Below are positions 18,534 through 45,196 of a DNA stretch of 64,000 bases, piece after piece. Where the stretch lies: positions 62,001 to 126,000 of IMG/VR virus record IMGVR_UViG_3300023174_000033; one strand, given 5' to 3'. Below the pieces are notes generated by a model. That model did not search any database, was not told the origin of the DNA, and saw only the letters and a program-made list of their open reading frames with translations. Made by a program: the position numbers and the translations under genes. Numbering within the stretch: the stretch's first letter is position 1; each line of letters starts with the position of its first letter.

Positions 18534-19059
18534 GAAATTTATACCAGATACAAATCCCAATTGGGTCATAAGAAACAATACACTATATTATAAAAAGGGA
18601 GGATTAATACCTTTTTTAAAAAAAATTGATGGTAATTACTTTATATCACTTGACAGAAGGGCTACCAAGAAAGTAACCAAACTAATGAAGAAGTTACAAG
18701 ATATGGGTATAATTTTCTATCTATGTGATAGAATGACAATTGCTGAAAAACATATCTATAATCAAGATTTAGAGCGAATAATCAGAAATTATTTATTAGG
18801 ATTGAGTGATGAAAATTTCTTCCATTATGTACAAAATTCAAATTTTGACTACATAAAAAATCTTACTGATTTTTTAAATATGTACGATTGTCATAAACTT
18901 TTCAAAAAAGTTTATGATTCGCTCTTACACGGACATTTTACGAAAGTAACGATGGATTGGTATACTAGAACTAAATATAATATCGTTAAAAATGAGGAGA
19001 TTAGAGATTTCTACCAGATCTTGGAAAGACAAATCAAGTTAAATATCTTTTTTTCCTAG
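18523..19059 (+). CDS. Hypothetical protein
   Basis: 178 aa; ends RQIKLNIFFS. Confidence 0.6.
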   Translation: MDIEKFIPDTNPNWVIRNNTLYYKKGGLIPFLKKIDGNYFISLDRRATKKVTKLMKKLQDMGIIFYLCDRMTIAEKHIYNQDLERIIRNYLLGLSDENFFHYVQNSNFDYIKNLTDFLNMYDCHKLFKKVYDSLLHGHFTKVTMDWYTRTKYNIVKNEEIRDFYQILERQIKLNIFFS

Positions 19060-31763: not shown

Positions 31764-32366
31764 ATGAAATATAAAGAACTAAAAATCATAGGTCTCTCCT
31801 ACAGTCAAACTCAGGTTGGTTCTTATGTCATTGTACTTTCCGAAAAAAATGGAAATAAAAAACTTCCTATCATAATCAAAGCAAACGAAGCGCAATCTAT
31901 TGCTTTGAAACTAGAAGGCATAAAGACACAAAAAGATCTCACACATGATTTAATTAAGAATGTTTTAGACAAAATGGGTGGTGACCTTTATGAAGTTAGA
32001 ATTACTCATATGTTGGAAGGTATGTTCTACACCAAACTTATATTTCATAATATGATTGAAGAATTTGAAATTGAATCATCAATCGGAGATGCTCTTTGTT
32101 TGGCAGTCACATACAAATGTCCAATTGTTTGCTCAAAGGAAGTTCTAAATCTTGGGGGAATTGAAATGGATGATGATGGAAACATCACAGAAGAACAAAA
32201 TGAGAAGAACCATCAGTCAAAGGATCTTACCTCAATCGTTTCAGTTGCGGATCTTGAAAAGATGCTTGACAAAGCTATTGAGAATGAAGAATATGAAATC
32301 GCTTCTCAATTGAGAGATAAAATTGCAGAATTAAAATTGACAGAAGAAAAAAATAAGAACGTATAA
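31764..32366 (+). CDS. Bifunctional nuclease family (DUF151) protein with C-terminal UvrB/C motif
   Basis: LPIII...EAQSIA...LTHDL...DALCLA...PI; L.KAIENEEYEIASQLRD. Confidence 0.85.
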   Translation: MKYKELKIIGLSYSQTQVGSYVIVLSEKNGNKKLPIIIKANEAQSIALKLEGIKTQKDLTHDLIKNVLDKMGGDLYEVRITHMLEGMFYTKLIFHNMIEEFEIESSIGDALCLAVTYKCPIVCSKEVLNLGGIEMDDDGNITEEQNEKNHQSKDLTSIVSVADLEKMLDKAIENEEYEIASQLRDKIAELKLTEEKNKNV

Positions 32367-33220
32367 TGTGTTTAAGTTACATAGGTGGGAAAAGTAAAAT
32401 AGCGAAATCTTTTATTGTCCCAAGAATACCAAAAGATATTGAGGTTTATGTAGAACCTTTTAGTGGTATGTATTGGACATTTTTTGGTATGGATTTGGAT
32501 CAATATCCAAATCTTAAAACAATCGTTTATAATGATTGGAACCCATTGAATGTAAATTTGTTCAGATGTTTACAGACACCTGAAATTCTATTACAACACT
32601 GTGAGAAAATACCAGTGCAACAAAAAGGTGTTTTCCCAACACCTATTCAATGTAAGAAGTTTTTTCAAGATGCTCAGGATGAATTATATAGAAGTGGTTT
32701 AGAATTAACCGACGAACCAAACTTTGATGTCGCTGCTAAACACGCTCTAATTTTAGCTAGTGTGTTCTCTGGGGCTAATCCAGAGAGATCGACTTTCATT
32801 GATCTGAAAGGTAAATACAATTCAAAGTTTACTTCTTTTATGAATAAATTAAGAAATCCTGGATGGTTGAGGAAATTCAAATCAATAACTTTTGTGAGTC
32901 AAGGTGATTTTGAAGATTGTATCAAGAAGTGGGATGGTGAGAAAACTTACTTTTATTGCGATCCACCATATTATATTGTAGGAGAAGGTAGTTATTACTC
33001 AAACCATTCCTTTTCAAGAAATGATCACGAAAGACTTGCTAACTCTTTAAAGTCAATCAAAGGTAAATTTTCGTTGAGTTATTACTTCTTTGATTTACTA
33101 ACACAATGGTTTCCAAAGTCAGATTACACTTGGACAAGGAAAGAATTCCCCAAAGCAGCTATGGCCAAAGCTGGTCAGAAACAAACAACTGCTGTTGAGC
33201 TTTTGATTATGAATTATTAA
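32366..33220 (+). CDS. DNA adenine methyltransferase (Dam/D12 class)
   Basis: YIGGKS, YVEPFSG, YND, catalytic DPPY. Confidence 0.9.
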   Translation: MCLSYIGGKSKIAKSFIVPRIPKDIEVYVEPFSGMYWTFFGMDLDQYPNLKTIVYNDWNPLNVNLFRCLQTPEILLQHCEKIPVQQKGVFPTPIQCKKFFQDAQDELYRSGLELTDEPNFDVAAKHALILASVFSGANPERSTFIDLKGKYNSKFTSFMNKLRNPGWLRKFKSITFVSQGDFEDCIKKWDGEKTYFYCDPPYYIVGEGSYYSNHSFSRNDHERLANSLKSIKGKFSLSYYFFDLLTQWFPKSDYTWTRKEFPKAAMAKAGQKQTTAVELLIMNY

Positions 33221-33899: not shown

Positions 33900-33928
33900 A
33901 AAAAAGGTCTTAAATTAAGACCTTTTTT
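33900..33928. terminator. Bidirectional intrinsic terminator
   Basis: AAAAAAGGTCTTAA-A-TTAAGACCTTTTTT between convergent units. Confidence 0.85.
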
Positions 33929-33978
33929 GTAGCCGAAGCGGGAATCGAACCCGCACGTCCTTGCGGACAAAGGATTTT

Positions 33979-34673
33979 CTTACTACTATAGTTTTCACTA
34001 CCCTTTCGGTTTGTAGTCTGGACTATACCTTAACCTTATCTTACGACTTAGGTTCTCCGTGTCTAGTCTCTACACCTTCTTCATTTCTGAAGCTTGGCTC
34101 GGTATTCCCATTTTAAAGGGTTCACCGAATTTACGGAGTTCTACTCAGAGATTTTCACCTCTGGCACTCATATTTTTCGCTCGATAGTTATCTGTAAATG
34201 AGTGGCAGTTTGGACATAATAATTGTATATTTTCAATTCTATTGTCAAATCTATCACCATTTATGTGATGTAGTTCAAGTGGGATATCAGAATCTAACCA
34301 TTTTGTCAAATTACACTTTACACAAACAGGTTCCATAATTTTCAACTTAAGAAGCTGATTCTTCAATTTATATGAAGAATAAGGTAAACCTGATGAATAA
34401 CATGAATTTTGAACCAATCTTGATGACAAATCTTTATTTTTTGACCAAGTCTTTCCTTTACTCCAAAGTTGGCCATGAAAATGAGAAGTGTCTAATCCAA
34501 ATTGTTTAATTCTAGTTTTTATATTCTGATAGTTTCCACCAGCTTCTTTAAGTCCAAGTTTTTGTAAAACTTGTCTAACAGAATAACACTCACTAACTAT
34601 AAGTTCTAAATTTTCTTTTGTATATTTATTGTTCATACATTATATATAAAAAATAGAATACAAAAAAAGAACC
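33979..34673 (-). mobile_element. Group I intron (IC3-like), 695 nt, in the tRNA-Leu anticodon
   Basis: Follows U34 and ends in G. IGS GAGTGCC (34169-34163) pairs with exon GGACUU. P AAATTCGGTGAA, Q AATACCGAG, R GTAGAGACTAGA, S GGTATAGTCCA. P3 CTCCGT/ACGGAG; P7 GACTA/TAGTC. Confidence 0.9.
34145..34636 (-). CDS. Intron-encoded HNH homing endonuclease
   Basis: CVKC...LELHHINGDRFDNRIENIQLLCPNCH; N-terminal helical DNA-binding-like segment; lies wholly inside the intron. Confidence 0.9.
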   Translation of the reverse strand: MNNKYTKENLELIVSECYSVRQVLQKLGLKEAGGNYQNIKTRIKQFGLDTSHFHGQLWSKGKTWSKNKDLSSRLVQNSCYSSGLPYSSYKLKNQLLKLKIMEPVCVKCNLTKWLDSDIPLELHHINGDRFDNRIENIQLLCPNCHSFTDNYRAKNMSARGENL

Positions 34674-34769
34674 AAGTCCTTCGTGTATACCAGTTTCACC
34701 ATCCGGCCATAATTAAAATTATATAACTTTTTTAGACATAAGTTTTTTTTTTAAAAAAAGTATAAAAAA

Positions 34770-34846
34770 CAGGTTGGGTGTTTTTTGTGTAGTTCTCTAC
34801 ACTGATATTCAATTTGTATTTGTTAATATTTTGCTGAAATCAACCT
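34770..34846 (-). ncRNA. Candidate structured ncRNA copy B (Y-RNA-like?)
   Basis: AGGTTGATTTCAGCAAAATATTAACAAATAC...ATCAGTGTAGAGAACTACACAAAAAACACCCAACCTG. Terminal stem GGTTG/CAACC; internal hairpin GTGTAG/CTACAC. Confidence 0.5.
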
Positions 34847-34870
34847 TTACTTTTACACTTAAAAAAACCA

Positions 34871-34926
34871 CAGGATAATTTTTTACTGATCCATTAGTAT
34901 TGTTAAGTTTTGCTGAACTTATCCCT
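34871..34926 (-). ncRNA. Candidate structured ncRNA copy A (Y-RNA-like?)
   Basis: AGGGATAAGTTCAGCAAAACTTAACAATACTAATGGATCAGTAAAAAATTATCCTG. Terminal stem GGATAA/TTATCC; same core as copy B. Confidence 0.5.
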
Positions 34927-34931
34927 TTTGG

Positions 34932-36335
34932 TTATACTTTTATATCTTTATATCTCACTTTGTTTAGTGTTTCTTCCATAATTTTCACTGGGCTCAAGTC
35001 TTCACCACCCAAGATTGATTTAAGAATTGATGGACTCAATCCAGAAATAAGAGCTGTCCCTTTTTCATCAAACTTCACTGGGAAATTTGAATTTCTTGAT
35101 TGAATGTTCCAGTAAATTATATCTGGCATTTTGTATCCAATATTCTCATACTGATGTCTAATCATTTCTTGAGCGGTGAAAGAGCCTCCTTGTGCTTCAT
35201 CAAACTCCATATCACTCATAATCAGAATTTTGGTGGGCATTTCTGACTCGGATACCTTGTTCTCTAAAGCTTTATTTAGAATAAGGGTAAACACTGCTTC
35301 CAAGTTTGTATTCATCCCCCAAGAAGCGTTCTGTAGTTGCAAAAACCTTTCATTCAAATTACCAAGCAGCTTTTGCAATTGTGGTTTACTTGAGAATGTG
35401 ATGAAGTGATCTTTGAATATACCCTCAATCCTCTCGGAAATATACATTCCGAGTGAGATTGAGACATCCATACAGGTCACACTGCCCTTCCCACCAATTA
35501 GGGTTGACATTGATCCGGATACGTCTACAAGGGGTAAGATTCTCTCACTAGAGTCTTCCATGTAATTTGGAAGTGCTTTCCATTGCTCATTCGCCAATCC
35601 TTGATTACCATATTGCAAAGTCTTGATTACATCATATGGATACAAGGTGGAAGCATTGACTTTGGTTGTTCCCTCTTTTAGAGATTGTAAGTAAGAAGCA
35701 AATCCTACTTGATCTCTGTTTGTGAAGACCTTCGTATATCTTGACATAGCTAATGACGGCACCTTTGAATATTCAATATTTTGCCATTCTTTAGCACACA
35801 TCTTTTGCTCTACCGTGTTAGACAATCTAACCAATAGTTGACGAAGTTCTTTTGGGGTAGTTTTCATCCTTTTACGGATTTTGTTAAAGACTACTCCCTT
35901 TCTGGGAATCCATTTCGAGCAAAGTCCATCACCTTTCTCTAAACCACTCAAAATAAGGTCTAAAACGTCCTCTTCAAGTTCAGTTCCGAACAGAGTGAAA
36001 ATATCGTCCCATCTTCCATATTCGGATATAAGGTGAATATTTTTCCTTAACTCATTCGGGTGAGTTTGGGCTAGGAACTCAATTATATCCTTGAATATCT
36101 GTCGTTCACCGGCACCTTCTCTAACATCCCTTGACCAGAAAAGAATTTTCATAGCCGTTATTGGTGACTCATTAAAGGATTTACTAAACATACTAAGAAG
36201 TCTAGATTTATCCTGTCCACGCATAGCACCGATTGTGAAGAATAAGTTTACACATTCGTTCATAGTAGTTGAATTAGTCAACATACCATTCTCGGTAAAT
36301 ACGTCTTTCGTCTGTAGCGATTCTAGAAAATTCAT
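34932..36335 (-). CDS. DUF2828 family protein (Ro60/TROVE-like helical domain + VWA)
   Basis: TENG, RDVREGAGER, YGRWDD, KWIPR, YSKVPS.AM, MIDAS DVSGSM, SDMEFD, YWN, SG.SP motifs. Confidence 0.85.
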   Translation of the reverse strand: MNFLESLQTKDVFTENGMLTNSTTMNECVNLFFTIGAMRGQDKSRLLSMFSKSFNESPITAMKILFWSRDVREGAGERQIFKDIIEFLAQTHPNELRKNIHLISEYGRWDDIFTLFGTELEEDVLDLILSGLEKGDGLCSKWIPRKGVVFNKIRKRMKTTPKELRQLLVRLSNTVEQKMCAKEWQNIEYSKVPSLAMSRYTKVFTNRDQVGFASYLQSLKEGTTKVNASTLYPYDVIKTLQYGNQGLANEQWKALPNYMEDSSERILPLVDVSGSMSTLIGGKGSVTCMDVSISLGMYISERIEGIFKDHFITFSSKPQLQKLLGNLNERFLQLQNASWGMNTNLEAVFTLILNKALENKVSESEMPTKILIMSDMEFDEAQGGSFTAQEMIRHQYENIGYKMPDIIYWNIQSRNSNFPVKFDEKGTALISGLSPSILKSILGGEDLSPVKIMEETLNKVRYKDIKV

Positions 36336-36646: not shown

Positions 36647-39600
36647 TTATTTGTATAATATTGTACCTGTTGTGGATGAGGAGAATGTTACCCCAAACGA
36701 ATTAACATCATTGTGAATTATACTAATTGGATTTATTACACTGTTATTAGTATCTAGTATCTGAACGATCGGGAAATATCCTAAGTTGTGTTGGACAAGG
36801 TATTCCGTACCACTGTTGAGTCCTGTGCCATCCAATGAATAACTACATCCAACTAGACTCGGTAACCAAGTTAATTGACCAATACCGTTTACTCCAATTG
36901 CAAAACTCGCAGATCCTCTAACATAATTCAGATTGACCCAACTATTTCCTATGGTGATACTGTTTGACGCACCATACTCAACACTGTTGCTTTCCAAGTG
37001 TATGTAAGGACCACTACCAGCTGTTGAACCGTCAATTAAATCAGATGCGGATACTTCAATTTTCGCCTCAAATGAAGGTGGATCAATATGAGAACCTCCA
37101 ATTATGTATTTACTTCTAATCTTAACTCTTTCCTCAACATCAACATTCGATATTGGGGCTTGGTAGAAATCCGATCTAGAATTATTAATACCAACCCCAG
37201 CTAATCCACCCGATACAAAATTTTCCCTACTTGAGTAAACTGCTGGATATAATTCGTTTGTGGTGTGGTCGTATTTGCTAGCACTTGGGTTAAATCCAAT
37301 AAGACCAGATGATTCAAGTACAAATGCGTATTCACTATTAGCCAAAGTCGCGCCTTTTATGTATCCATCTGTCGTTGAGTTGGAAATTTTAATTACATAA
37401 TCACCATCGTAAGACCATGAAGCGGTATTTCCAATTGTTAGAGTTTGGTCAAATGTGTAGATTGGAGCTGGTCCTTGTGGACCTGTGTCACCTTGATCGC
37501 CTTGAGGTCCCATCTCACCTTGTTCACCTTGTGGGCCCATCTCGCCTTGGTCACCTTGTGGGCCCATCTCGCCTTGGTCACCCTGTGGCCCCATTTCGCC
37601 TTGGTCACCCTGTGGCCCCATCTCACCTTGGTCACCCTGTGGCCCCATCTCACCTTGGTCACCCTGTGGCCCCATCTCACCTTGGTCACCCTGTGGCCCC
37701 ATCTCACCTTGGTCACCCTGTGGCCCCATCTCGCCTTGGTCACCCTGTGGCCCCATCTCACCTTGGTCACCCTGTGGCCCCATCTCACCTTGGTCACCCT
37801 GTGGCCCCATCTCACCTTGGTCACCCTGTGGCCCCATCTCACCTTGGTCACCCTGTGGCCCCATCTCACCTTGGAATCCTTGAGGACCAGTTACTCCTTG
37901 TACACCCTGGACACCCTGTAGACCCTGTGGACCAGTTATTCCTTGAACACCTTGGAATCCTTGTGGGCCAATCATACCTTGATGCCCTTGTGGGCCGAAA
38001 TCACCTTGGAATCCTTGTGGACCAGTAACACCTTGGAAACCTTGTGGACCGGTTGATCCCTGTGGACCAGATAGCCCTTGAAGACCTTGTGGACCAGTCA
38101 TACCTTGGAAACCTTGAGGACCGGTATCTCCTTGATATCCTTGTGGGCCCGTATTACCAAATGGCATGAAAGTGAAATTATAAATACTGTTAGGATAGAA
38201 TTGACCATTTGAGACAACAGGAGAGGAAAGACTCAACCCATAAACATTATTACTCTGTATTAGATTAACACCATAAACTGGGTAAATACCAACATTACTA
38301 GCTGTCAAAGCATCGGATACCTGTATCCATGTATTAATACCCTTATCAACAAATGTTTTTAGTGAATTAAACCAACCAGAGTAGTTTACCCCGTTGACAT
38401 CAGTTTTGTGAATTTTCAGATAATCATTCAGAGCGAAATTTGCATCTTCAATATCAAACTTACCAGTAGCAACACTGCCATTATCTAAACTCTCACATCT
38501 CCACTGTACCACAGTTTGTACTAAAGAAGTAACGGTTCCTTGTGGTCCTTCCAAACCTTGGAATCCCTGTGGACCCATATCACCCTGTGGACCACTTACA
38601 CCTTGGAAACCTTGTGGACCAGTCTCACCCTGTAATCCTTGTGGACCACTATAACCTTGAGGGCCAGTCATACCTTGTGGACCAGTCTCACCCTGTAATC
38701 CTTGTGGACCACTATAACCTTGAGGGCCAGTTACACCCTGTAATCCCTGTGGGCCAATAATACCCTGAAAACCTTGAGGGCCAGTTTCACCCTGTGACCC
38801 TTGAGGCCCAGACAACCCTTGAACCCCCTGTGGACCAGTATCACCTTGATTACCTTGGGGACCACTGTAACCCTGTGGACCACTGTAACCCTGTGGACCA
38901 AAATCACCTTGGAATCCTTGCGGACCTGTAATTCCTTGAACACCAGTTGATCCAGTTGATCCAACCGAACCATTAGCCACCCAAGTTACGTTATAAAGTT
39001 GCTCAGCAGCGAAAGATCCACTTGAAACAACAGCGGTTGAATCCACTTTAACAGAGTAGGTTGTGCCGTTGCCGGTCACACCAGTTACTCTATATAGCCC
39101 TGTATTACTTGGAGTTAAAGCATCGTAAATTTGTAGATAACTAGTGTTTTCATTTTGAACAAATATTCTAAGTTGATCAAACCATAATGAGTAATCTACA
39201 CTTTGTATATCTTGTTTATGGAAATTAAATTCTGAATTATTAGCAAATGTATTATTTTCAGAACTGAAATAATTTGGGTTATTTAATAGAGGATTGAAAC
39301 CTTTATACTTCCACTGGACAATTGTTTGCACTAATGACACAACCGAACCTTGGTCACCTTTGTATCCTTGTGGACCTGTTTCGCCCTGTGGACCAGATAA
39401 TCCCTGTAATCCTTGTGGGCCAGTATTACCTTGGAATCCTTGTGGGCCAGTATTACCTTGAACACCTTGAAAACCTTGAGGACCAATATTACCTTGATTA
39501 CCTTGTGGACCAGTCATTCCTTGATTACCTTGTGGACCAGTCATTCCTTGGAAACCTTGTGGACCAGTCATTCCTTGGAAACCTTGTGGACCAGTTTCAC

Positions 39601-42600
39601 CCTGTGACCCAGTATTTCCCTGTGAACCTTGAACGCCTTGGAAACCTTGTGGACCAGTCATTCCTTGATTACCTTGTGGACCAGTATTGCCTTGCAAACC
39701 TTGTGGACCAGATAAACCTTGAGGGCCAGTCACACCTTGCAAACCTTGTGGACCAGATAAACCTTGAGGACCAGTCACACCTTGCAAACCTTGTGGACCA
39801 GATAAACCTTGAGGACCAGTTCTTCCGAATGGTATCCAAGTAACATTGAAAACACTGGTTGGATTTAGAGTTCCGTTACCAACGATTTTATTCCCAACGT
39901 TAATAGTGTATTTAGGATCCGTGTAAGATAAACTACTAACTGGAAATAAACCAGTGTTACTTACTGTTAGCGAATCGTAAACTTGTATATAAGCTAAACT
40001 TCCACCGTCTACAAATCCTTTTAATTGGTCAAACCAATCGTTATAATCAACACCATTTATATCAAATTTATTGAAAACAAACTGTGTTGGTGGTGATGTA
40101 GTGAAGTTCGAACTGTTTGATTCAAATCTTCCATTCGGAAGTGATCCACCTATCAATCCGTCATATCTCCACTGCACAATTGTTTGCACCACCGAAACAA
40201 CTACACCCTGTGGTCCGGTATCACCTTGTAGTCCTTGATTACCCTGTGGGCCACTGAATCCTTGTGGACCAGTTACACCTTGATATCCTTGTGGACCAAA
40301 TTTTCCTTGTGGTCCTGTATCACCTTGTAATCCTTGTGGACCAGATAATCCTTGTGGACCTGTCTCCCCTTGGAATCCTTGCGGACCGGTGTTACCCTGA
40401 AAACCCTGTGGACCAGATAGACCCTGAAGACCTTGTGGGCCACTGAATCCTTGTGGACCGGTGTCACCTTGATACCCCTGTGGACCCGTATTACCTTGTA
40501 GACCTTGTGGGCCGGTGTTACCCTGGAATCCTTGAGGACCTGTATCACCTTGATAACCTTGAGGACCCGTATTACCTTGTAGACCTTGCGCGCCGGTGTT
40601 ACCCTGGAATCCTTGTGGACCAGTCATACCTTGTAACCCTTGGGGACCAGTCATACCTTGTAACCCTTGTGGGCCGGTGTCACCTTGATAACCTTGTGGA
40701 CCACTATATCCTTGCGGGCCAGTCTCACCTTGGAAACCTTGTGGACCAGTCTCTCCCTGAACGCCAGTTGAACCGGTGCCCCCAACTGAACCATTAGCAA
40801 CCCATGTTACGTTGTATAGTTGTTCAGTCGCAAAACTACCATTTGAAACAACTGCTGTAGAATCAACAGATACAGAATAAGTTGTCCCGTTGCCGGTCAC
40901 ACCAGTTACTCTATATAGCCCTGTATTACTTGGAGTTAAAGCATCGTAAATTTGTAGATAACTAGTATTTTGATTCTCAATGAATATTCTTAATTGTTCA
41001 AACCAAAGAGAATAGTCAACACTTTGTATATCTTGTTTATGGAAATTAAATTCGTTATTACTACCAAATGCAGGATTTTGTGAACTGAAATAATTTGGGA
41101 ATGATCCTAATGGATTCGTACCTTTGTATTTCCACTGAACAATTGTTTGCACTAATGACACAACCGAACCTTGGTCACCTTTGTATCCTTGTGGACCAGA
41201 ATATCCTTGTGGACCAGATAAACCTTGCACACCTTGTGGACCTGTCTCACCTTGGAAACCTTGTGGACCTGTCTCACCTTGGAAACCTTGAGGGCCAGAT
41301 AAACCTTGAAGTCCCTGAGGCCCGGTCATACCTTGGAAACCCTGTGGGCCAGTTGAACCTTGATATCCTTGTGTGCCAGTGTTTCCTTGTGGACCTGTAT
41401 CACCTTGCAAACCTTGTGGACCAGTTGAACCTTGAAACCCCTGTGGACCAGATAATCCCTGTAAACCTTGTGGACCAGATAAACCTTGTAGTCCTTGTGG
41501 ACCGGTATCACCTTGGAAACCTTGTGGGCCGAAATCACCTTGGAAACCTTGTGGGCCTGTAACTCCTTGTAGTCCCTGGGAGCCACTGTATCCTTGTGGA
41601 CCAGTTATTCCTTGGAAACCTTGGGGTCCTGTTTCACCTTGATATCCTTGAGGACCTGTATTACCTTGAGATCCTGTGTTGCCCTGTGGACCTGTATTAC
41701 CTTGGAATCCTTGAGGACCTGTATTACCTTGGAATCCTTGAGGACCTGTGTCGCCTTGATAACCTTGTGGACCACTAAAACCCTGTGGACCAGTGTCACC
41801 TTGTGGACCAGTTGGTCCGGTAGCACCTATGGAACCATTTACGAACCAACCAATGTTATATATGTTGTTACCTGTAAACGTGCCACTACCAACTATAGCT
41901 GGAACGTCTGTAAAGATATAGTAGCTATGGGTACTAAATACTTGAGAAGGACTTGTCTGTGTAGCAGCAAGAACTTTGTAGAATCCAGTTATACTCTGAG
42001 TTGTTGAATCATAGATTTGTAAGTATGAAGGATTTTCATTATTAACAAACTTTTGCAATTGATCAAACCAGAGTGAATAACTAACTGAGTTGATATCCCT
42101 AAATTCAAATCTGAAATAAGGGTTAGTTGGTAAATCAATACTACTAGTTTCAAAATAACCTTGGGTTAGGCCGCCACCCAATAAACCACCATACTTATAT
42201 TGTATTATGGTTTGGACCATGGAAACAACTAATCCGTCAACTCCTTGTGGGCCGGTATCACCTTGGAATCCTTGTGGGCCAAAGTCTCCTTGGAATCCTT
42301 GAGGTCCACTAAATCCTTGGGTGCCTTGTGGGCCGGTATCGCCTTGTGAACCTTGTGGGCCAGATAATCCTTGTGGACCAGTGTTTCCTTGATATCCTTG
42401 TGGACCAGTGTTTCCTTGATATCCTTGTGGGCCAGATAATCCTTGATGTCCCTGTGGACCAGTGTCTCCCTGTGATCCTTGTGGACCAGTATCTCCTTGA
42501 AAACCTTGAGGACCAGTGTCTCCCTGATAACCCTGCGGACCACTTTCGCCTTGAAAACCTTGAGGACCAGTGTCTCCCTGATAACCCTGCGGACCGGTAT

Positions 42601-45196
42601 CACCTTGATAACCCTGCGGACCACTTTCTCCTTGATAACCCTGCGGACCAGTATCACCTTGATAACCCTGCGGACCAGTATTACCTTGGAATCCCTGTGG
42701 ACCACTTTCTCCTTGAAAACCTTGCGGACCAGTATCACCCTGATATCCTTGCGGACCGGTATCTCCCTGTAGTCCCTGTGGGCCAGTATCACCTTGATAT
42801 CCCTGTGCCCCCTGTGGGCCAGTATCACCTTGATATCCTTGCGGACCGGTATCACCTTGAAATCCTTGATCACCTTGTGGGCCAGTATCACCTTGTGATC
42901 CCTGTGGGCCAGTATCACCTTGATAACCCTGTGGGCCAGTATCTCCTTGAAATCCTTGATCACCTTGTGGGCCAGTATCACCTTGATATCCTTGAGGACC
43001 GGTATCTCCCTGAACGCCTTGAGGACCAGTCTCACCTTGGAAACCTTGAGGACCAGTCTCACCTTGAACACCAGTTGAACCAGTACCACCAAATGATCCA
43101 TTAGCAACCCAAGTAACATTATAAACTTGTTCTGTTGCGAAACTTCCATTTGACACTAATGCGGTTGAGTCAACCGAAATTGAATAAGTTGAACTTCCAT
43201 ATGTAACACCAGTCACTCGGTATAGACCAGTGTTACTGGATGTTAAAGCATCATATACTTGTAAATAACTTACATTTTGACTATCTACGAAAGTTAAGAG
43301 TTGTTGAAACCAAACTGAATAATCTATGGATTGATTATCTAGTTTATTGAAAATAAATTCACTATTACTAGCAAAAGTAGGTTGATCGGAAGTAAAATAT
43401 TTTGATACCGGTTCAGTTGCTGAATTTAGACCTTGGTATTTCCACTGAACAACAGTTTGAACTAATGAAACAACAACCCCCTGTGGACCTTGTTCACCTT
43501 GAGTTCCGGAAAAACCTTGAGGACCGGATAATCCTTGAACACCCTGTGGGCCAATTTCCCCTTGTGGGCCACTTTCTCCTTGAAAACCTTGCGGACCAGT
43601 ATCACCTTGATGCCCTTGCGGACCAGTATCACCCTGTAGTCCCTGTGGACCTGTTTCACCTTGATACCCCTGTGCCCCCTGTGGACCTGTTTCACCCTGG
43701 TAACCTTGTGGGCCAGAAATACCTTGCACACCTTGTGGACCAGTTTCTCCTTGGAATCCCTGTGGGCCGGTATCACCTTGATATCCCTGTGGACCTGATA
43801 AACCTTGTAGTCCTTGTGGACCCGTCAAACCTTGTGGACCAGTTAAACCTTGATAACCCTGTGGGCCAGAAAGTCCTTGTGGACCCGTGAAACCTTGTGG
43901 GCCTTGTGGACCGGTGTCACCTTGATAACCTTGAACTCCGGTTTCTCCTTGCCAACCTTGTGGACCAGAAACACCTTGAGGACCTGTAGTGCCTTGGAAA
44001 CCTTGAACACCAGTACTGCCCTGCCATCCTTGTGGACCAGAAAGTCCTTGTGGACCAGTAACACCCTGGAAACCTTGAACACCAGTACTACCCTGCCATC
44101 CTTGTGGACCAGATAACCCCTGTAATCCTTGTGGACCAGTAAAACCTTGATATCCTTGCACACCAGTGTTTCCCTGCCATCCTTGTGGACCAGATAAACC
44201 CTGGAATCCTTGTGGACCAGTCATACCTTGATATCCTTGTGGACCAGATAACCCCTGTAAACCTTGTGGACCTGTATCACCTTGCAAACCTTGTGGGCCG
44301 GTTCTACCTTGGAATCCCTGTGGACCAGTTCTACCTTGATAACCTTGAGGCCCAGATAAACCTTGAAAACCCTGTGGGCCACCAGAACCTTGAGAACCAG
44401 TGGCACCACCACCGGTTATAATCTTACCACTGAATTGTTGGTCAAAAGTAACAACGTAAGTATCTGTACTAATATAATTAACAGAATATGAAGCTGGTTG
44501 AATGTTTACGTTACCATTGGAGGTATCAACTGCTTGTACTAGTGGATATCCATTGAAACTATGTGTAACAGTAACTTGAGTTTTATTAGAAAAGTCTGTT
44601 ATAAAATTTGAGACAGCATCAAGACCTCTCGGACCTTGAACACCTTGTGGTCCACTCAAACCCTGAAAACCAGTATTGCCTCTACCTGGGTTTGTAGCCC
44701 AACCAATTGTATAGGTTCTCCCATCTACAAATACACCACCAACTGCAATTGGTTGCACATTTAGATCAAACCCCGTAAATCCATCATCTACAATATTTGT
44801 TACTTGAAAAAGAGCTCTGTTTAGAGGGTCTTGATCTTCAACTATATTTAAATAACTTATTTGTTCACGGTCAACAAAAACTTTCAATTGTTGTAACCAA
44901 GGGGAATAATCCACACCATAAAGGTCAATATATTGAATACTTAAAGAAGTAATAAATTCAGGATCGTCATTATTTGCAACAAATTTTTGTATGGTTGTAA
45001 GATTACCACCAGCTAGATATTTCCATTTTGATGAAGGTGAAGATAATTGCACTACCACGCCCTGTGGTCCTGTTTCGCCCTTTGGTGGTAAATCTACCGG
45101 ATTCCCAAATCCATCGTAGAATTCATTTCCGTTTATAACTTGTACTAATCGTTGATATGTACCTGATACGGTTGTTCCGGTTAAATTATATGACAT
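36647..45196 (-). CDS. Giant collagen-like fibre protein with seven interspersed globular repeat domains
   Basis: 2849 aa; long (Gly-X-Y)n runs dominated by GPQG; repeated ~125-aa '[13 protein letters not shown]...YNVTW' domains; TAATATATAG upstream. Confidence 0.9.
37500..37875 (-). repeat. Near-perfect 27-bp tandem repeat (about 13 units, GPQGDQGEM)
   Basis: Unit CCTTGGTCACCCTGTGGCCCCATCTCA on the + strand repeated with few substitutions. Confidence 0.9.

What the first reader, a model, noticed from the sequence alone, without database searches (positions are those of the whole stretch)
34770..36335. Two related stem-closed small RNAs directly downstream of a DUF2828 (Ro60-like) gene: candidate phage Ro/Y-RNA-like RNP
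Seen: starting ~5 nt after the DUF2828 stop are two tandem elements (34926-34871 and 34846-34770, minus strand). They share AGG-N4/5-TTCAGCAAAA-(C/TA)TTAACAA-(A)TAC-N-AAT...ATCAGT...AAAAAA...CCTG. Their end-pairing stems differ in sequence but both pair (GGATAA/TTATCC vs GGTTG/CAACC), which looks like compensatory change and argues for a conserved RNA structure rather than a simple duplication. They lie on the same strand between the protein gene and the intron-containing tRNA-Leu. Known: Ro60/TROVE-VWA proteins bind Y RNAs through a 5'/3' terminal stem and are often encoded next to them and to RNA repair genes. Inference: DUF2828 binds these 'UUCAGCAA' RNAs, forming an undescribed ribonucleoprotein for tRNA/RNA quality control or counter-defence.
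Basis: partly seen in the sequence, partly recalled or inferred. Interest (0 to 1): 0.8.

Follow-up and report, generated by a model that had tools for sequence, protein, structure and literature searches.

The report
Ro60-like phage protein's partner RNAs
Two small stem-closed RNAs sit right after a phage gene for a Ro60-shaped protein; the same RNA type lies beside this gene family in many phage, bacterial and archaeal contigs and looks like the 'Class I' RNAs thought unique to social amoebae.

Summary
Two related elements lie on the minus strand, 4 nt after the DUF2828/DUF7788 stop codon: el1 (34870-34927) and el2 (34769-34848). Each has a terminal stem of different sequence, an unpaired UU(C)CAGCAA next to the 5' stem half, an A-run, and a 3' C-UGU.

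A covariance model built only from bacterial and archaeal loci finds exactly these two in the 64-kb window (40.3 and 25.7 bits; next best 13.3). Across about 130 related loci, nearly every hit is on the DUF2828 strand (41/41, 63/64, 33/33). All six stem pairs show compensatory changes.

The predicted protein structure (pLDDT 90) superposes full-length on Ro60 structures. Longer neighbouring RNAs carry the same closing module around a YrlA-like tRNA mimic.

Binding, discrete transcripts and function were not shown. My best reading is a Ro60/Y-RNA-type particle built on a divergent protein branch with an uncatalogued RNA family.

Unexpectedly, the RNA consensus matches the defining features of Dictyostelium Class I RNAs (RF01414). 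These hits are sub-threshold but recurrent, full-length, and found only at these elements. This suggests DUF2828-type proteins are the missing partner of those RNAs. I could not check whether Dictyostelium encodes such a protein.

The parts
34932..36335 (-). Gene for a 467-aa DUF2828/DUF7788 protein. It is a Ro60-like HEAT-repeat ring plus a vWA domain with an intact MIDAS motif.
   Evidence: Pfam hits. AlphaFold model with pLDDT 90.2 and pTM 0.90. Full-length Foldseek matches to Ro60 structures. Invariant DxSxS...T...D residues.
34870..34927 (-). el1, a short-form partner RNA of 58 nt. Sub-features: 5' AAG; stem GGAUAA (34919-34924) pairing with UUAUCC (34873-34878); unpaired GUU-CAGCAA (CAGCAA at 34910-34915); an A-run; 3' UGU (34870-34872). 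A U-run follows at 34855-34869.
   Evidence: sequence. R2 40.3 bits, E 9.5e-7. R1 54.5 bits, but el1 was in that model's training set.
34769..34848 (-). el2, a short-form partner RNA of 80 nt with an extra inner hairpin. Sub-features: 5' AAA; stem GGUUG (34841-34845) pairing with CAACC (34772-34776); AUUU-CAGCAA (CAGCAA at 34831-34836); hairpin at 34787-34802; an A-run; 3' UGU (34769-34771). A U-run follows.
   Evidence: R1 25.6 bits, E 0.026 (el2 was not in the training set). R2 25.7 bits, E 0.002. RF01414 full-length match at 16.8 bits. MFE z-score -2.2 to -3.2.
33931..34707 (-). Context, not part of the particle: tRNA-Leu(UAA) on the same strand. Exons are 34674-34707 and about 33931-33978. 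They are interrupted after U34 by a group I intron (33979-34673) that carries an HNH endonuclease ORF (34145-34636). An intrinsic terminator follows at 33900-33928.
   Evidence: Rfam Intron_gpI 51.5 bits. HNH Pfam hits. Sequence reading. Terminator scan.

Best explanation
el1 and el2 are small non-coding RNAs that serve as the RNA subunits of a Ro60/Y-RNA-type ribonucleoprotein. The protein subunit is the DUF2828/DUF7788 protein encoded immediately upstream.

Proposed protein-binding module (inferred): the 5-6-bp terminal stem, whose sequence is free but whose outermost G-C pair is fixed, together with the adjacent single-stranded U-U-A/C-CAGCAA, the A-rich 3' loop segment, and the 3' C-UGU.

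Proposed variable module (inferred): the interior of the RNA. It is a plain A/U-rich loop in el1 and a loop plus hairpin in el2. In long-form relatives it is a permuted T-arm/acceptor-like hairpin/D-arm tRNA mimic, as in YrlA.

Proposed function, by analogy with Ro60-Y RNA: the RNA gates the protein ring or tethers it to other factors such as exoribonucleases or tRNA-handling enzymes. This would serve RNA surveillance or repair during infection.

Likely biogenesis in this phage: the two RNAs are made as the 3' part of the DUF2828 transcript, or of a DUF2828-RNA-tRNA-Leu transcript, and then trimmed out.

What is shown: the sequences, the conserved structure, the gene linkage and the protein fold. 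What is inferred: binding, processing and function.
For: Linkage between gene and RNA:
- Model R1 on the window plus 52 viral loci gave 41 hits at E<=1, all on the DUF2828 strand.
- R1 on 80 bacterial and archaeal loci with homologs of 33-55% identity gave 64 hits, 63 on the gene's strand, mostly within 1 kb upstream.
- R2, trained on bacterial and archaeal loci only, gave 33/33 same-strand hits on viral loci and exactly two hits in this window.
- A fixed sequence-plus-stem rule gave 64 same-strand hits, 4 opposite-strand hits, and about 3 in shuffles, over 58 non-redundant viral loci.
- Conversely, of 102 exact matches to one 15-mer of the motif in viral contigs, 47 have the complementary stem half. 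Of those, 39 have DUF2828 on the same strand within the held flank. All 43 DUF2828 co-occurrences were same-strand.

Structure: all six stem pairs covary in two independent sets.

Protein: full-length structural match to Ro60 and to phage phiLo Ro60, with an invariant MIDAS motif. Homologs in mycobacteriophages are annotated 'Ro-like RNA binding protein'.

Y-RNA kinship: long forms beside the same genes give full-length but sub-threshold YrlA matches of 37-40.5 bits. They carry the same closing stem plus CAGCAA, for example L073 2275-2391.

Hint of direct protein recognition: in KVP40 a mini-copy of the module encloses the gene's own Shine-Dalgarno sequence in its loop and its likely ATG start codon (ATG at L068 2992) in its 3' stem half (L068 2957-2998). 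This is the layout of a translational operator. Similar mini-copies lie about 20 nt upstream of the Shine-Dalgarno sequence in L075 and L066.

Precedent: phage phiLo Ro60 binds two Y-like RNAs encoded next to its gene (PMC12135203). YrlA RNAs lie within 4 kb of Ro60 genes on the same strand (PMC4201824).

Weak expression hint: a lake metatranscriptome holds one 168-nt contig, 34836-35005, covering el1 plus the 3' end of the ORF.
Against: - There are no binding data and no evidence of discrete RNA ends. The RNA-library contig could be DNA carry-over, and it spans ORF and element rather than a 58-nt species.
- No Rfam family reaches its gathering score on el1 or el2. No Pfam TROVE hit was found, and there is no sequence-level match to solved Ro60 structures.
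- el1's fold is not more stable than shuffles.
- These loci are rich in RNA genes generally (tRNA arrays, tmRNA). Some of the co-location may therefore reflect a shared 'RNA gene neighbourhood' rather than a specific partnership.
- No sigma-70-like promoter stands out for the elements.
- For the look-alike Dictyostelium Class I RNAs, the one proven direct binder is an RRM protein, not a Ro-like one (PMC7919456).
Confidence: 0.7

Rival explanations
1. The elements are cis-acting protein-binding sites in the DUF2828 mRNA, acting as 3'-UTR or 5'-UTR operators for autoregulation or mRNA stability. On this view they are not free-standing trans-acting RNAs.
For: el1 starts 4 nt after the stop codon and no promoter is evident. 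The RNA-library contig joins the ORF 3' end to el1. The KVP40, L075 and L066 mini-copies overlap or abut the translation start region.
Against: In many loci the elements are separated from the gene by an inserted ORF of about 360-660 nt, or lie up to 1-3 kb away. They also occur in arrays of 3-5 copies, or interleaved between tRNA genes as in Felix O1. Long forms contain tRNA-like modules typical of stand-alone Y RNAs. The operator-like copies are truncated at 33-42 nt, so they look like mimics of the full RNA rather than the full RNA itself.
Confidence: 0.15
2. The RNAs are real small RNAs but work with a different partner, such as a host or phage RRM-type or other RNA-binding protein, or they act by base-pairing. 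Their position next to DUF2828 would then only reflect clustering of RNA genes.
For: The loci are full of tRNAs, tmRNA and other non-coding RNAs. The Dictyostelium look-alikes bind an RRM protein directly (PMC7919456).
Against: The linkage holds across very distant hosts and in loci without tRNA arrays. It is strictly same-strand and usually within a few hundred nt. The exact-15-mer search recovers DUF2828 neighbours. Operator-like copies sit on the DUF2828 start site itself.
Confidence: 0.1
3. The elements are only transcription terminators, RNA-processing signals, or DNA-level repeats such as recombination or homing sites.
For: Both are followed by U-runs. They lie between a protein gene and a tRNA gene.
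Against: A 5-6-bp closing stem spanning a 40-65-nt loop is not an intrinsic terminator, and the terminator scan finds none here. The invariant part, CAGCAA, is single-stranded and is conserved across proteins only 33-60% identical, while the stem covaries. The strict strand bias argues for an RNA-level function.
Confidence: 0.04

Closest known systems
Ro60 with Y RNAs: bacterial Rsr with YrlA/Yrn1, and Thermus phage phiLo Ro60 with Yrl1/Yrl2
   Same: The protein is a ring-shaped HEAT-repeat plus vWA/MIDAS fold. The small RNAs are encoded next to the gene on the same strand, are closed by pairing of their 5' and 3' ends, often occur in two or more copies per locus, and some carry a tRNA-like module (PMC4201824, PMC12135203).
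   Different: The protein is detected by DUF2828/DUF7788 models, not by the TROVE model, and has no sequence-level match to solved Ro60 structures. el1 and el2 have no tRNA-like domain and are about half the length of YrlA. The conserved element is a single-stranded CAGCAA beside a short stem, rather than the YrlA closing helix or the CGAA motif used to find the phiLo Yrls. YrlA scores stay below the gathering score (37-40 bits against 69).
Dictyostelid Class I RNAs (Rfam RF01414; Kjellin et al. 2021, PMC7919456)
   Same: Both are about 60 nt long and about 30-40% G+C. Both have a 5' AAG and a 3' CUGU, and a 6-bp terminal stem whose sequence varies with compensatory changes. The outermost G is fixed and pairs with the C of CUGU. 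An unpaired conserved motif follows the 5' stem half. Many phage copies read CCUUACAGCAA, identical to the RF01414 consensus. The rest of the loop is variable and A/U-rich. RF01414 was the only Rfam family that repeatedly gave full-length matches at the short-form elements (16.8-29.2 bits), and it matched nowhere else in the DNA searched.
   Different: All scores are below the gathering score of 41.5. The stem-to-CAGCAA spacing is one nt shorter in the prokaryotic and viral family. The near-invariant U is at motif position 4 rather than 3. The Dictyostelium genes are dispersed, multi-copy and driven by a DUSE promoter, not linked to a protein gene. The known direct binder there is the RRM protein Rnp1A. 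Whether Dictyostelium has a DUF2828 protein was not testable here.
Other TROVE-module particles (vault TEP1 with vault RNA, telomerase p80)
   Same: A TROVE-like ring protein is paired with a small structured RNA.
   Different: The proteins are far larger and multidomain, and the RNAs are unrelated. I did not test this beyond the fold match to Ro60.

Membership tests
Ro60 / TROVE-vWA proteins | [quoted passage not shown] | tested here: met
   Foldseek against PDB: 2i91, 1yvp, 1yvr, 9nfa and 9kop at E 6e-9 to 2e-7 and TMq 0.54-0.66, aligned over the whole protein. Model pLDDT is 90.
Ro60 / TROVE-vWA proteins | MIDAS motif (DxSxS...T...D) in the vWA domain | tested here: met
   D271, S273, S275, T343 and D375 are invariant in 31 homologs.
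Ro60 / TROVE-vWA proteins | Recognition by the Pfam TROVE model (PF05731), or sequence similarity to solved Ro60 structures | tested here: not met
   Only PF11443 and PF25043 hit. phmmer against PDB sequences found nothing relevant. An Atlas cluster mixing TROVE, DUF7788 and DUF2828 labels hints at a bridge between the families.
Ro60 / TROVE-vWA proteins | Binds Y RNA on the outer ring surface and misfolded RNA ends in the central cavity | not testable with these tools
   This needs biochemistry or a solved complex.
Y RNA / YrlA (RF02553) | 5' and 3' ends pair into a closing stem that carries the protein-binding site | tested here: met
   The terminal stem has full covariation support.
Y RNA / YrlA (RF02553) | tRNA-like domain (T-arm, acceptor-like hairpin, D-arm) | tested here: not met
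   It is absent from el1 and el2. It is present in long-form relatives at other loci: L071, L073, L256, L191, L249 and L263.
Y RNA / YrlA (RF02553) | Score at or above the Rfam gathering threshold (69 bits) | tested here: not met
   There is no hit on el1 or el2. Relatives' long forms score 29.6-40.5 bits.
Y RNA / YrlA (RF02553) | Encoded within a few kb of the Ro-type gene, on the same strand | tested here: met
Dictyostelid Class I RNA (RF01414) | Length about 42-65 nt with a short (6-bp) stem joining the 5' and 3' ends; stem sequence variable, outermost G fixed | tested here: met
   el1 is 58 nt with a 6-bp stem. el2 is 80 nt with a 5-6-bp stem, so it is longer than the class range. The first pair is G-C in 39 of 40 viral copies.
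Dictyostelid Class I RNA (RF01414) | 11-nt motif next to the 5' stem half, with U3, C6, C9, A10 and A11 near-invariant | tested here: inconclusive
   C6, A7, G8, C9, A10 and A11 are invariant or nearly so in the family. The conserved U is one position off, and the spacing to the stem is 1 nt shorter. Many loci carry the exact CCUUACAGCAA.
Dictyostelid Class I RNA (RF01414) | Conserved termini: 5' AAG and 3' CUGU | tested here: met
   el1 reads AAG...CCUGU and el2 reads AAAG...CCUGU. The family consensus is WWA-G...C-UGU.
Dictyostelid Class I RNA (RF01414) | Score at or above the Rfam gathering threshold (41.5 bits) | tested here: not met
   el2 scores 16.8 bits and el1 is not reported. Relatives score 17.5-29.2 bits. 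For this reason I do not file the elements as members of RF01414.
Dictyostelid Class I RNA (RF01414) | DUSE promoter about 60 nt upstream; dispersed multi-copy nuclear genes | tested here: not met
   This is a phage context, directly downstream of a protein gene.

The most novel reading that the evidence does not exclude
The Class I RNAs of dictyostelid social amoebae were reported as unique to that group and have no known mechanism. On this reading they are the eukaryotic branch of a DUF2828-partner RNA family that is also present in phages, bacteria and archaeal MAGs.

DUF2828/DUF7788 proteins are Ro60-shaped, and structural relatives carrying the DUF7788 name, one of them named 'Plant/T31B5-30 protein', appear in the AlphaFold cluster search (organisms not shown). 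They would then be the missing core protein of Class I RNPs.

The uncharacterised protein DDB_G0281243, pulled down with Class I RNA DdR-21, is an obvious candidate to check.

If this holds, other DUF2828-bearing eukaryotes may hide an unrecognised Y-RNA-like class.
Probability: 0.4. Interest if true: 0.92.

Novelty: new variant of a known kind. Interest (0 to 1): 0.82.

Why it matters
The finding extends the Ro60/Y-RNA paradigm to a large protein family labelled 'unknown function'. That family has more than 7,000 hits in the protein search, appears in 711 phage records, and includes model phages such as Felix O1, KVP40 and Listeria P100-like phages.

It also defines a compact RNA family with clear sequence rules that is absent from Rfam. 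That family can be annotated immediately in hundreds of genomes. Culturable phage-host pairs are available in which a minimal Ro-type particle can be dissected.

The KVP40 layout suggests the protein represses its own translation through a mimic of its RNA partner.

The match to Dictyostelium Class I RNAs would overturn the view that these RNAs are a dictyostelid invention tied to multicellularity. It would also give a concrete, testable candidate for their protein partner and mechanism.

Tried and rejected
- Rfam at gathering thresholds found nothing at the elements, either in the window or in 18 related loci.
- MAFFT alignments of the elements misplaced the 3' stem halves. I solved this by seeding a model from 7 equal-length copies.
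- A simple regex-plus-stem rule works in AT-rich viral loci (64 same-strand against 4 opposite-strand hits). It is uninformative in GC-richer bacterial contigs (51 against 40), so I used covariance models there.
- A possible third element at about 18696-18759 (-) was rejected: 11.4 bits, E 4.2, and no 5' G.
- The exact 15-mer scan includes roughly 40 chance matches inside coding regions. Only the matches with a complementary stem half are informative.
- Foldseek against Swiss-Prot models returned only vWA-domain matches. The AFDB-cluster, Atlas and feature searches confirmed the family but hid or lacked Dictyostelium information.
- I could not establish what DDB_G0281243 is, or whether Dictyostelium has a DUF2828 gene. 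Avesson 2011 and Aspegren 2004 are not held. The supplements and full-text searches were silent.
- Promoter and terminator scans were at background level.
- The only RNA run gave a single contig, which does not prove transcription.
Full report
**What is in the window**

On the minus strand, the ORF at 34932-36335 encodes a 467-aa protein. It matches Pfam DUF2828 (1e-37) and DUF7788 (2e-49). Four nucleotides after its TAA stop codon comes el1 (34870-34927). After a 21-nt U-rich spacer comes el2 (34769-34848).

Both elements have the same plan:
- A/A/G-rich leader;
- a terminal stem, GGAUAA/UUAUCC in el1 and GGUUG/CAACC in el2;
- three or four unpaired nucleotides and then CAGCAA;
- an A/U-rich interior, to which el2 adds a 6-bp hairpin at 34787-34802;
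- an A-run, the 3' stem half, and UGU followed by a U-run.

A tRNA-Leu(UAA) lies downstream on the same strand. It is split by a group I intron (Rfam 51.5 bits) that carries an HNH ORF, and it ends at a clean intrinsic terminator.

Other neighbours:
- a 2849-aa collagen-repeat protein upstream on the same strand;
- a bifunctional-nuclease/UVR gene and a Dam-type methylase on the other strand.

The window is part of a 464.6-kb freshwater viral contig.

**Is it more than chance?**

Yes. I extracted the DNA downstream of 80 viral homologs of the protein (42-60% identical). Most showed the same arrangement directly after the gene or after one inserted ORF, often as a short RNA followed by a longer one.

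I built covariance model R1 from seven equal-length copies.
- In the window plus 52 viral loci (843 kb, both strands), R1 found 41 matches at E<=1. All were on the strand of the DUF2828 gene. el2 was not in the training set and scored 25.6 bits.
- In 80 bacterial and archaeal assemblies with more distant homologs (33-55% identity), R1 found 64 matches. Of these, 63 were on the gene's strand and most were within 1 kb upstream. The assemblies include Bacillota, Chloroflexi, Micavibrio, Treponema, Synergistales and Promethearchaeota MAGs.

I built a second model, R2, only from that second set.
- An unfiltered R2 search of the window returns el1 (40.3 bits, E 9.5e-7) and el2 (25.7 bits, E 0.002). 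Nothing else scores above 13.3 bits.
- On the viral loci R2 gives 33/33 same-strand hits.

The converse test also holds. There are 102 exact occurrences of one 15-nt version of the motif in the viral collection. Of these, 47 have the complementary stem half 30-100 nt downstream. Of those 47, 39 have a DUF2828 gene on the same strand within the DNA held. About a dozen more are long forms with a T-arm, and the remainder sit in coding regions as chance matches.

**RNA structure**

All six positions of the terminal stem show compensatory changes.
- Viral set: 97.5% of cells pair, against 62% after shuffling partners and 23-57% after sliding the partner by 1-3 columns. There are 83 cells with changes on both sides.
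- Independent bacterial set: 100% of 236 cells pair, against 71% shuffled and 31-49% slid.

These alignments were fitted to the model, which favours pairing. Even so, the diversity of stems leaves little doubt. Examples are GGAUAA, GGUUG, GGAAGG, GGUUCC, GAUUCC, GGCUGA, GAAUAC, GAGGUU, GACGC and GGCAC.

The invariant part is single-stranded. C, G, C, A, A of CAGCAA are found in 40/40 viral copies. A U two positions before it is found in 37/40, the outermost G-C pair in 39/40, and U-G after the stem in most copies.

el1's folding energy is no better than that of shuffled sequence, while el2's is better. This fits an RNA held together by a protein rather than by its own stability.

**The protein**

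An AlphaFold model built with 31 homologs has pLDDT 90.2 and pTM 0.90. It aligns over its full length with Xenopus and human Ro60 structures (2i91, 1yvp, 1yvr, 9nfa: TMq 0.61-0.66, E about 1e-8). It also aligns with the Ro60 of Thermus phage phiLo (9kop).

The MIDAS residues of the vWA domain are invariant.

There is no Pfam TROVE hit and no sequence-level match to solved structures. This is therefore a divergent Ro60-like branch.

The family is very large:
- more than 7,000 hits in the protein search;
- 711 phage records, including Felix O1-like, KVP40-like, Listeria, Staphylococcus, Campylobacter, Enterococcus and cluster-L mycobacteriophages.

Some of these are already annotated 'Ro-like RNA binding protein' or 'RNA-binding protein'.

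**Long forms and operators**

Beside the same genes lie longer RNAs of about 100-250 nt. They have the same closing stem, the same CAGCAA and the same CUGU end. Their interior is a T-arm, a short hairpin and a D-arm, which is a permuted tRNA mimic. Examples are L071 1314-1413 and 1903-2010, and L073 2275-2391.

Rfam's YrlA model gives full-length but sub-threshold matches of 37-40.5 bits (gathering score 69) at such RNAs in viral loci, bacterial loci and mycobacteriophage LeBron. The family therefore grades into classical bacterial Y RNAs.

In KVP40, a 42-nt mini-copy (L068 2957-2998) follows a good promoter. It holds the gene's Shine-Dalgarno sequence in its loop and its likely ATG start codon (ATG at L068 2992) in its 3' stem half. 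L075 and L066 have a 33-nt mini-copy about 20 nt before the Shine-Dalgarno sequence.

I read these as translational operators that mimic the partner RNA. This is inference, but it is the most direct hint that the protein recognises this module.

**Model phages**

- Felix O1 has four unannotated copies interleaved with its tRNA genes just downstream of the DUF2828 gene.
- Listeria phage LMTA-57 has two strong copies and one long form in the unannotated 400 nt upstream of its gene. An RtcB ligase gene lies nearby.

**Expression**

Only one RNA library held any of the region. It gave a single 168-nt contig, 34836-35005, spanning the ORF's 3' end, all of el1 and the first bases of el2.

This is compatible with co-transcription with the gene. 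It does not prove transcription or discrete species.

No promoter stands out for the elements.

**Comparison with known families**

The system works like Ro60/Y RNA. Phage Ro60-Y-like pairs are already described (PMC4201824, PMC12135203).

Three things are not described in Rfam 15 or in the searchable literature:
- the DUF2828 branch as a Ro-type protein with its own RNAs;
- the short CAGCAA RNA family;
- its grading into YrlA-like forms.

The unexpected result concerns Dictyostelium Class I RNA (RF01414). It was the only Rfam family that repeatedly gave full-length matches at the short elements. The scores were:
- el2: 16.8 bits;
- L043: 28.9 bits;
- L053: 23.9 bits;
- L073: 22.3 and 17.5 bits;
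- L191: 29.2 bits;
- L184: 28.1 bits;
- L183: 25.9 bits;
- L249: 25.8 bits.

All were on the DUF2828 strand. No RF01414 hit occurred anywhere else in the DNA searched.

Kjellin et al. define Class I RNAs by these features:
- about 60 nt long and 32-41% G+C;
- a 6-bp terminal stem of variable sequence with compensatory changes;
- an invariant 5'-most G that pairs with the C of a conserved 3' CUGU;
- a 5' AAG;
- an unpaired 11-nt motif next to the 5' stem half.

The prokaryotic and viral family has every one of these. Many copies read CCUUACAGCAA, identical to the Rfam consensus.

The differences are:
- scores below the gathering score of 41.5;
- spacing 1 nt shorter;
- the conserved U shifted by one position;
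- different gene organisation.

I therefore do not file el1 and el2 as members of RF01414. I do consider a common origin, or a common type of protein partner, a serious possibility.

[quoted passage not shown] It does not mention Ro60, Y RNAs or phages.

One protein pulled down with Class I RNA DdR-21, DDB_G0281243, is of unknown function. I could not determine its domains or whether Dictyostelium has a DUF2828 gene.

**Verdict**

It is a new variant of a known kind, a Ro60/Y-RNA-type particle. It also carries a plausible and easily testable link to an unexplained eukaryotic RNA class.

Noticed in passing
window 33931-34707 (-): tRNA-Leu(UAA) is interrupted after U34 by a 695-nt group I intron that carries an HNH homing-endonuclease ORF (34145-34636). 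ARAGORN and the Rfam gathering run miss the tRNA because of the intron.
   Followed up: partly
window 36647-45196 (-): A 2849-aa ORF made largely of collagen triple-helix repeats (26 Pfam Collagen stretches, E 7e-232) lies directly upstream of the DUF2828 gene on the same strand.
   Followed up: no
L068 2957-2998 (Vibrio phage KVP40); L070 2953-2999; L075 2911-2947; L066 2921-2957: Truncated 33-42-nt copies of the stem+CAGCAA module lie at the DUF2828 gene's own translation start. In KVP40 the Shine-Dalgarno sequence is in the loop and the likely ATG start codon (L068 2992) is in the 3' stem half. This looks like an autoregulatory operator.
   Followed up: partly
L262 4711-4781, 4878-4939, 5332-5403, 5419-5547 (Salmonella phage Felix O1): Four unannotated copies of the RNA family lie between annotated tRNA genes just downstream of the DUF2828 gene. 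This suggests co-processing with tRNAs.
   Followed up: partly
L264 1422-1973 (Listeria phage LMTA-57): A ROOL-RNA-like match (88.5 bits; gathering score 99.1) lies about 1 kb upstream of the DUF2828 gene and its small RNAs. An RtcB-type 'tRNA-splicing ligase' is 1.3 kb downstream.
   Followed up: no
L184 1007-1068 (Micavibrio MAG contig): A freshwater-1 RNA (RF02979, 82.7 bits, above its gathering score) sits among tRNAs just upstream of a DUF2828 gene and near a Class I-like element at 658-722.
   Followed up: no
L047 6749-7240; L072 775-1031: A phage-encoded tmRNA (87 bits) and a permuted tmRNA (89.8 bits) lie within a few kb of DUF2828 genes. These loci are general hubs of RNA genes.
   Followed up: no
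L187 1410-1469 (Promethearchaeota MAG contig); L200: DUF2828 homologs occur on contigs binned as Asgard archaea. One has an upstream element (R2 27.1 bits, E 0.006). These contigs may be viral.
   Followed up: no
window 34836-35005: This is the only piece of the 1.8-kb stretch present in a lake metatranscriptome assembly. It is a 168-nt contig covering el1 and the ORF's 3' end, with 3 substitutions and a 2-nt shorter U-run.
   Followed up: partly
window 31764-33220 (+): A bifunctional-nuclease/UVR-motif gene and a D12-class N6-adenine DNA methyltransferase converge on the locus from the other strand.
   Followed up: no
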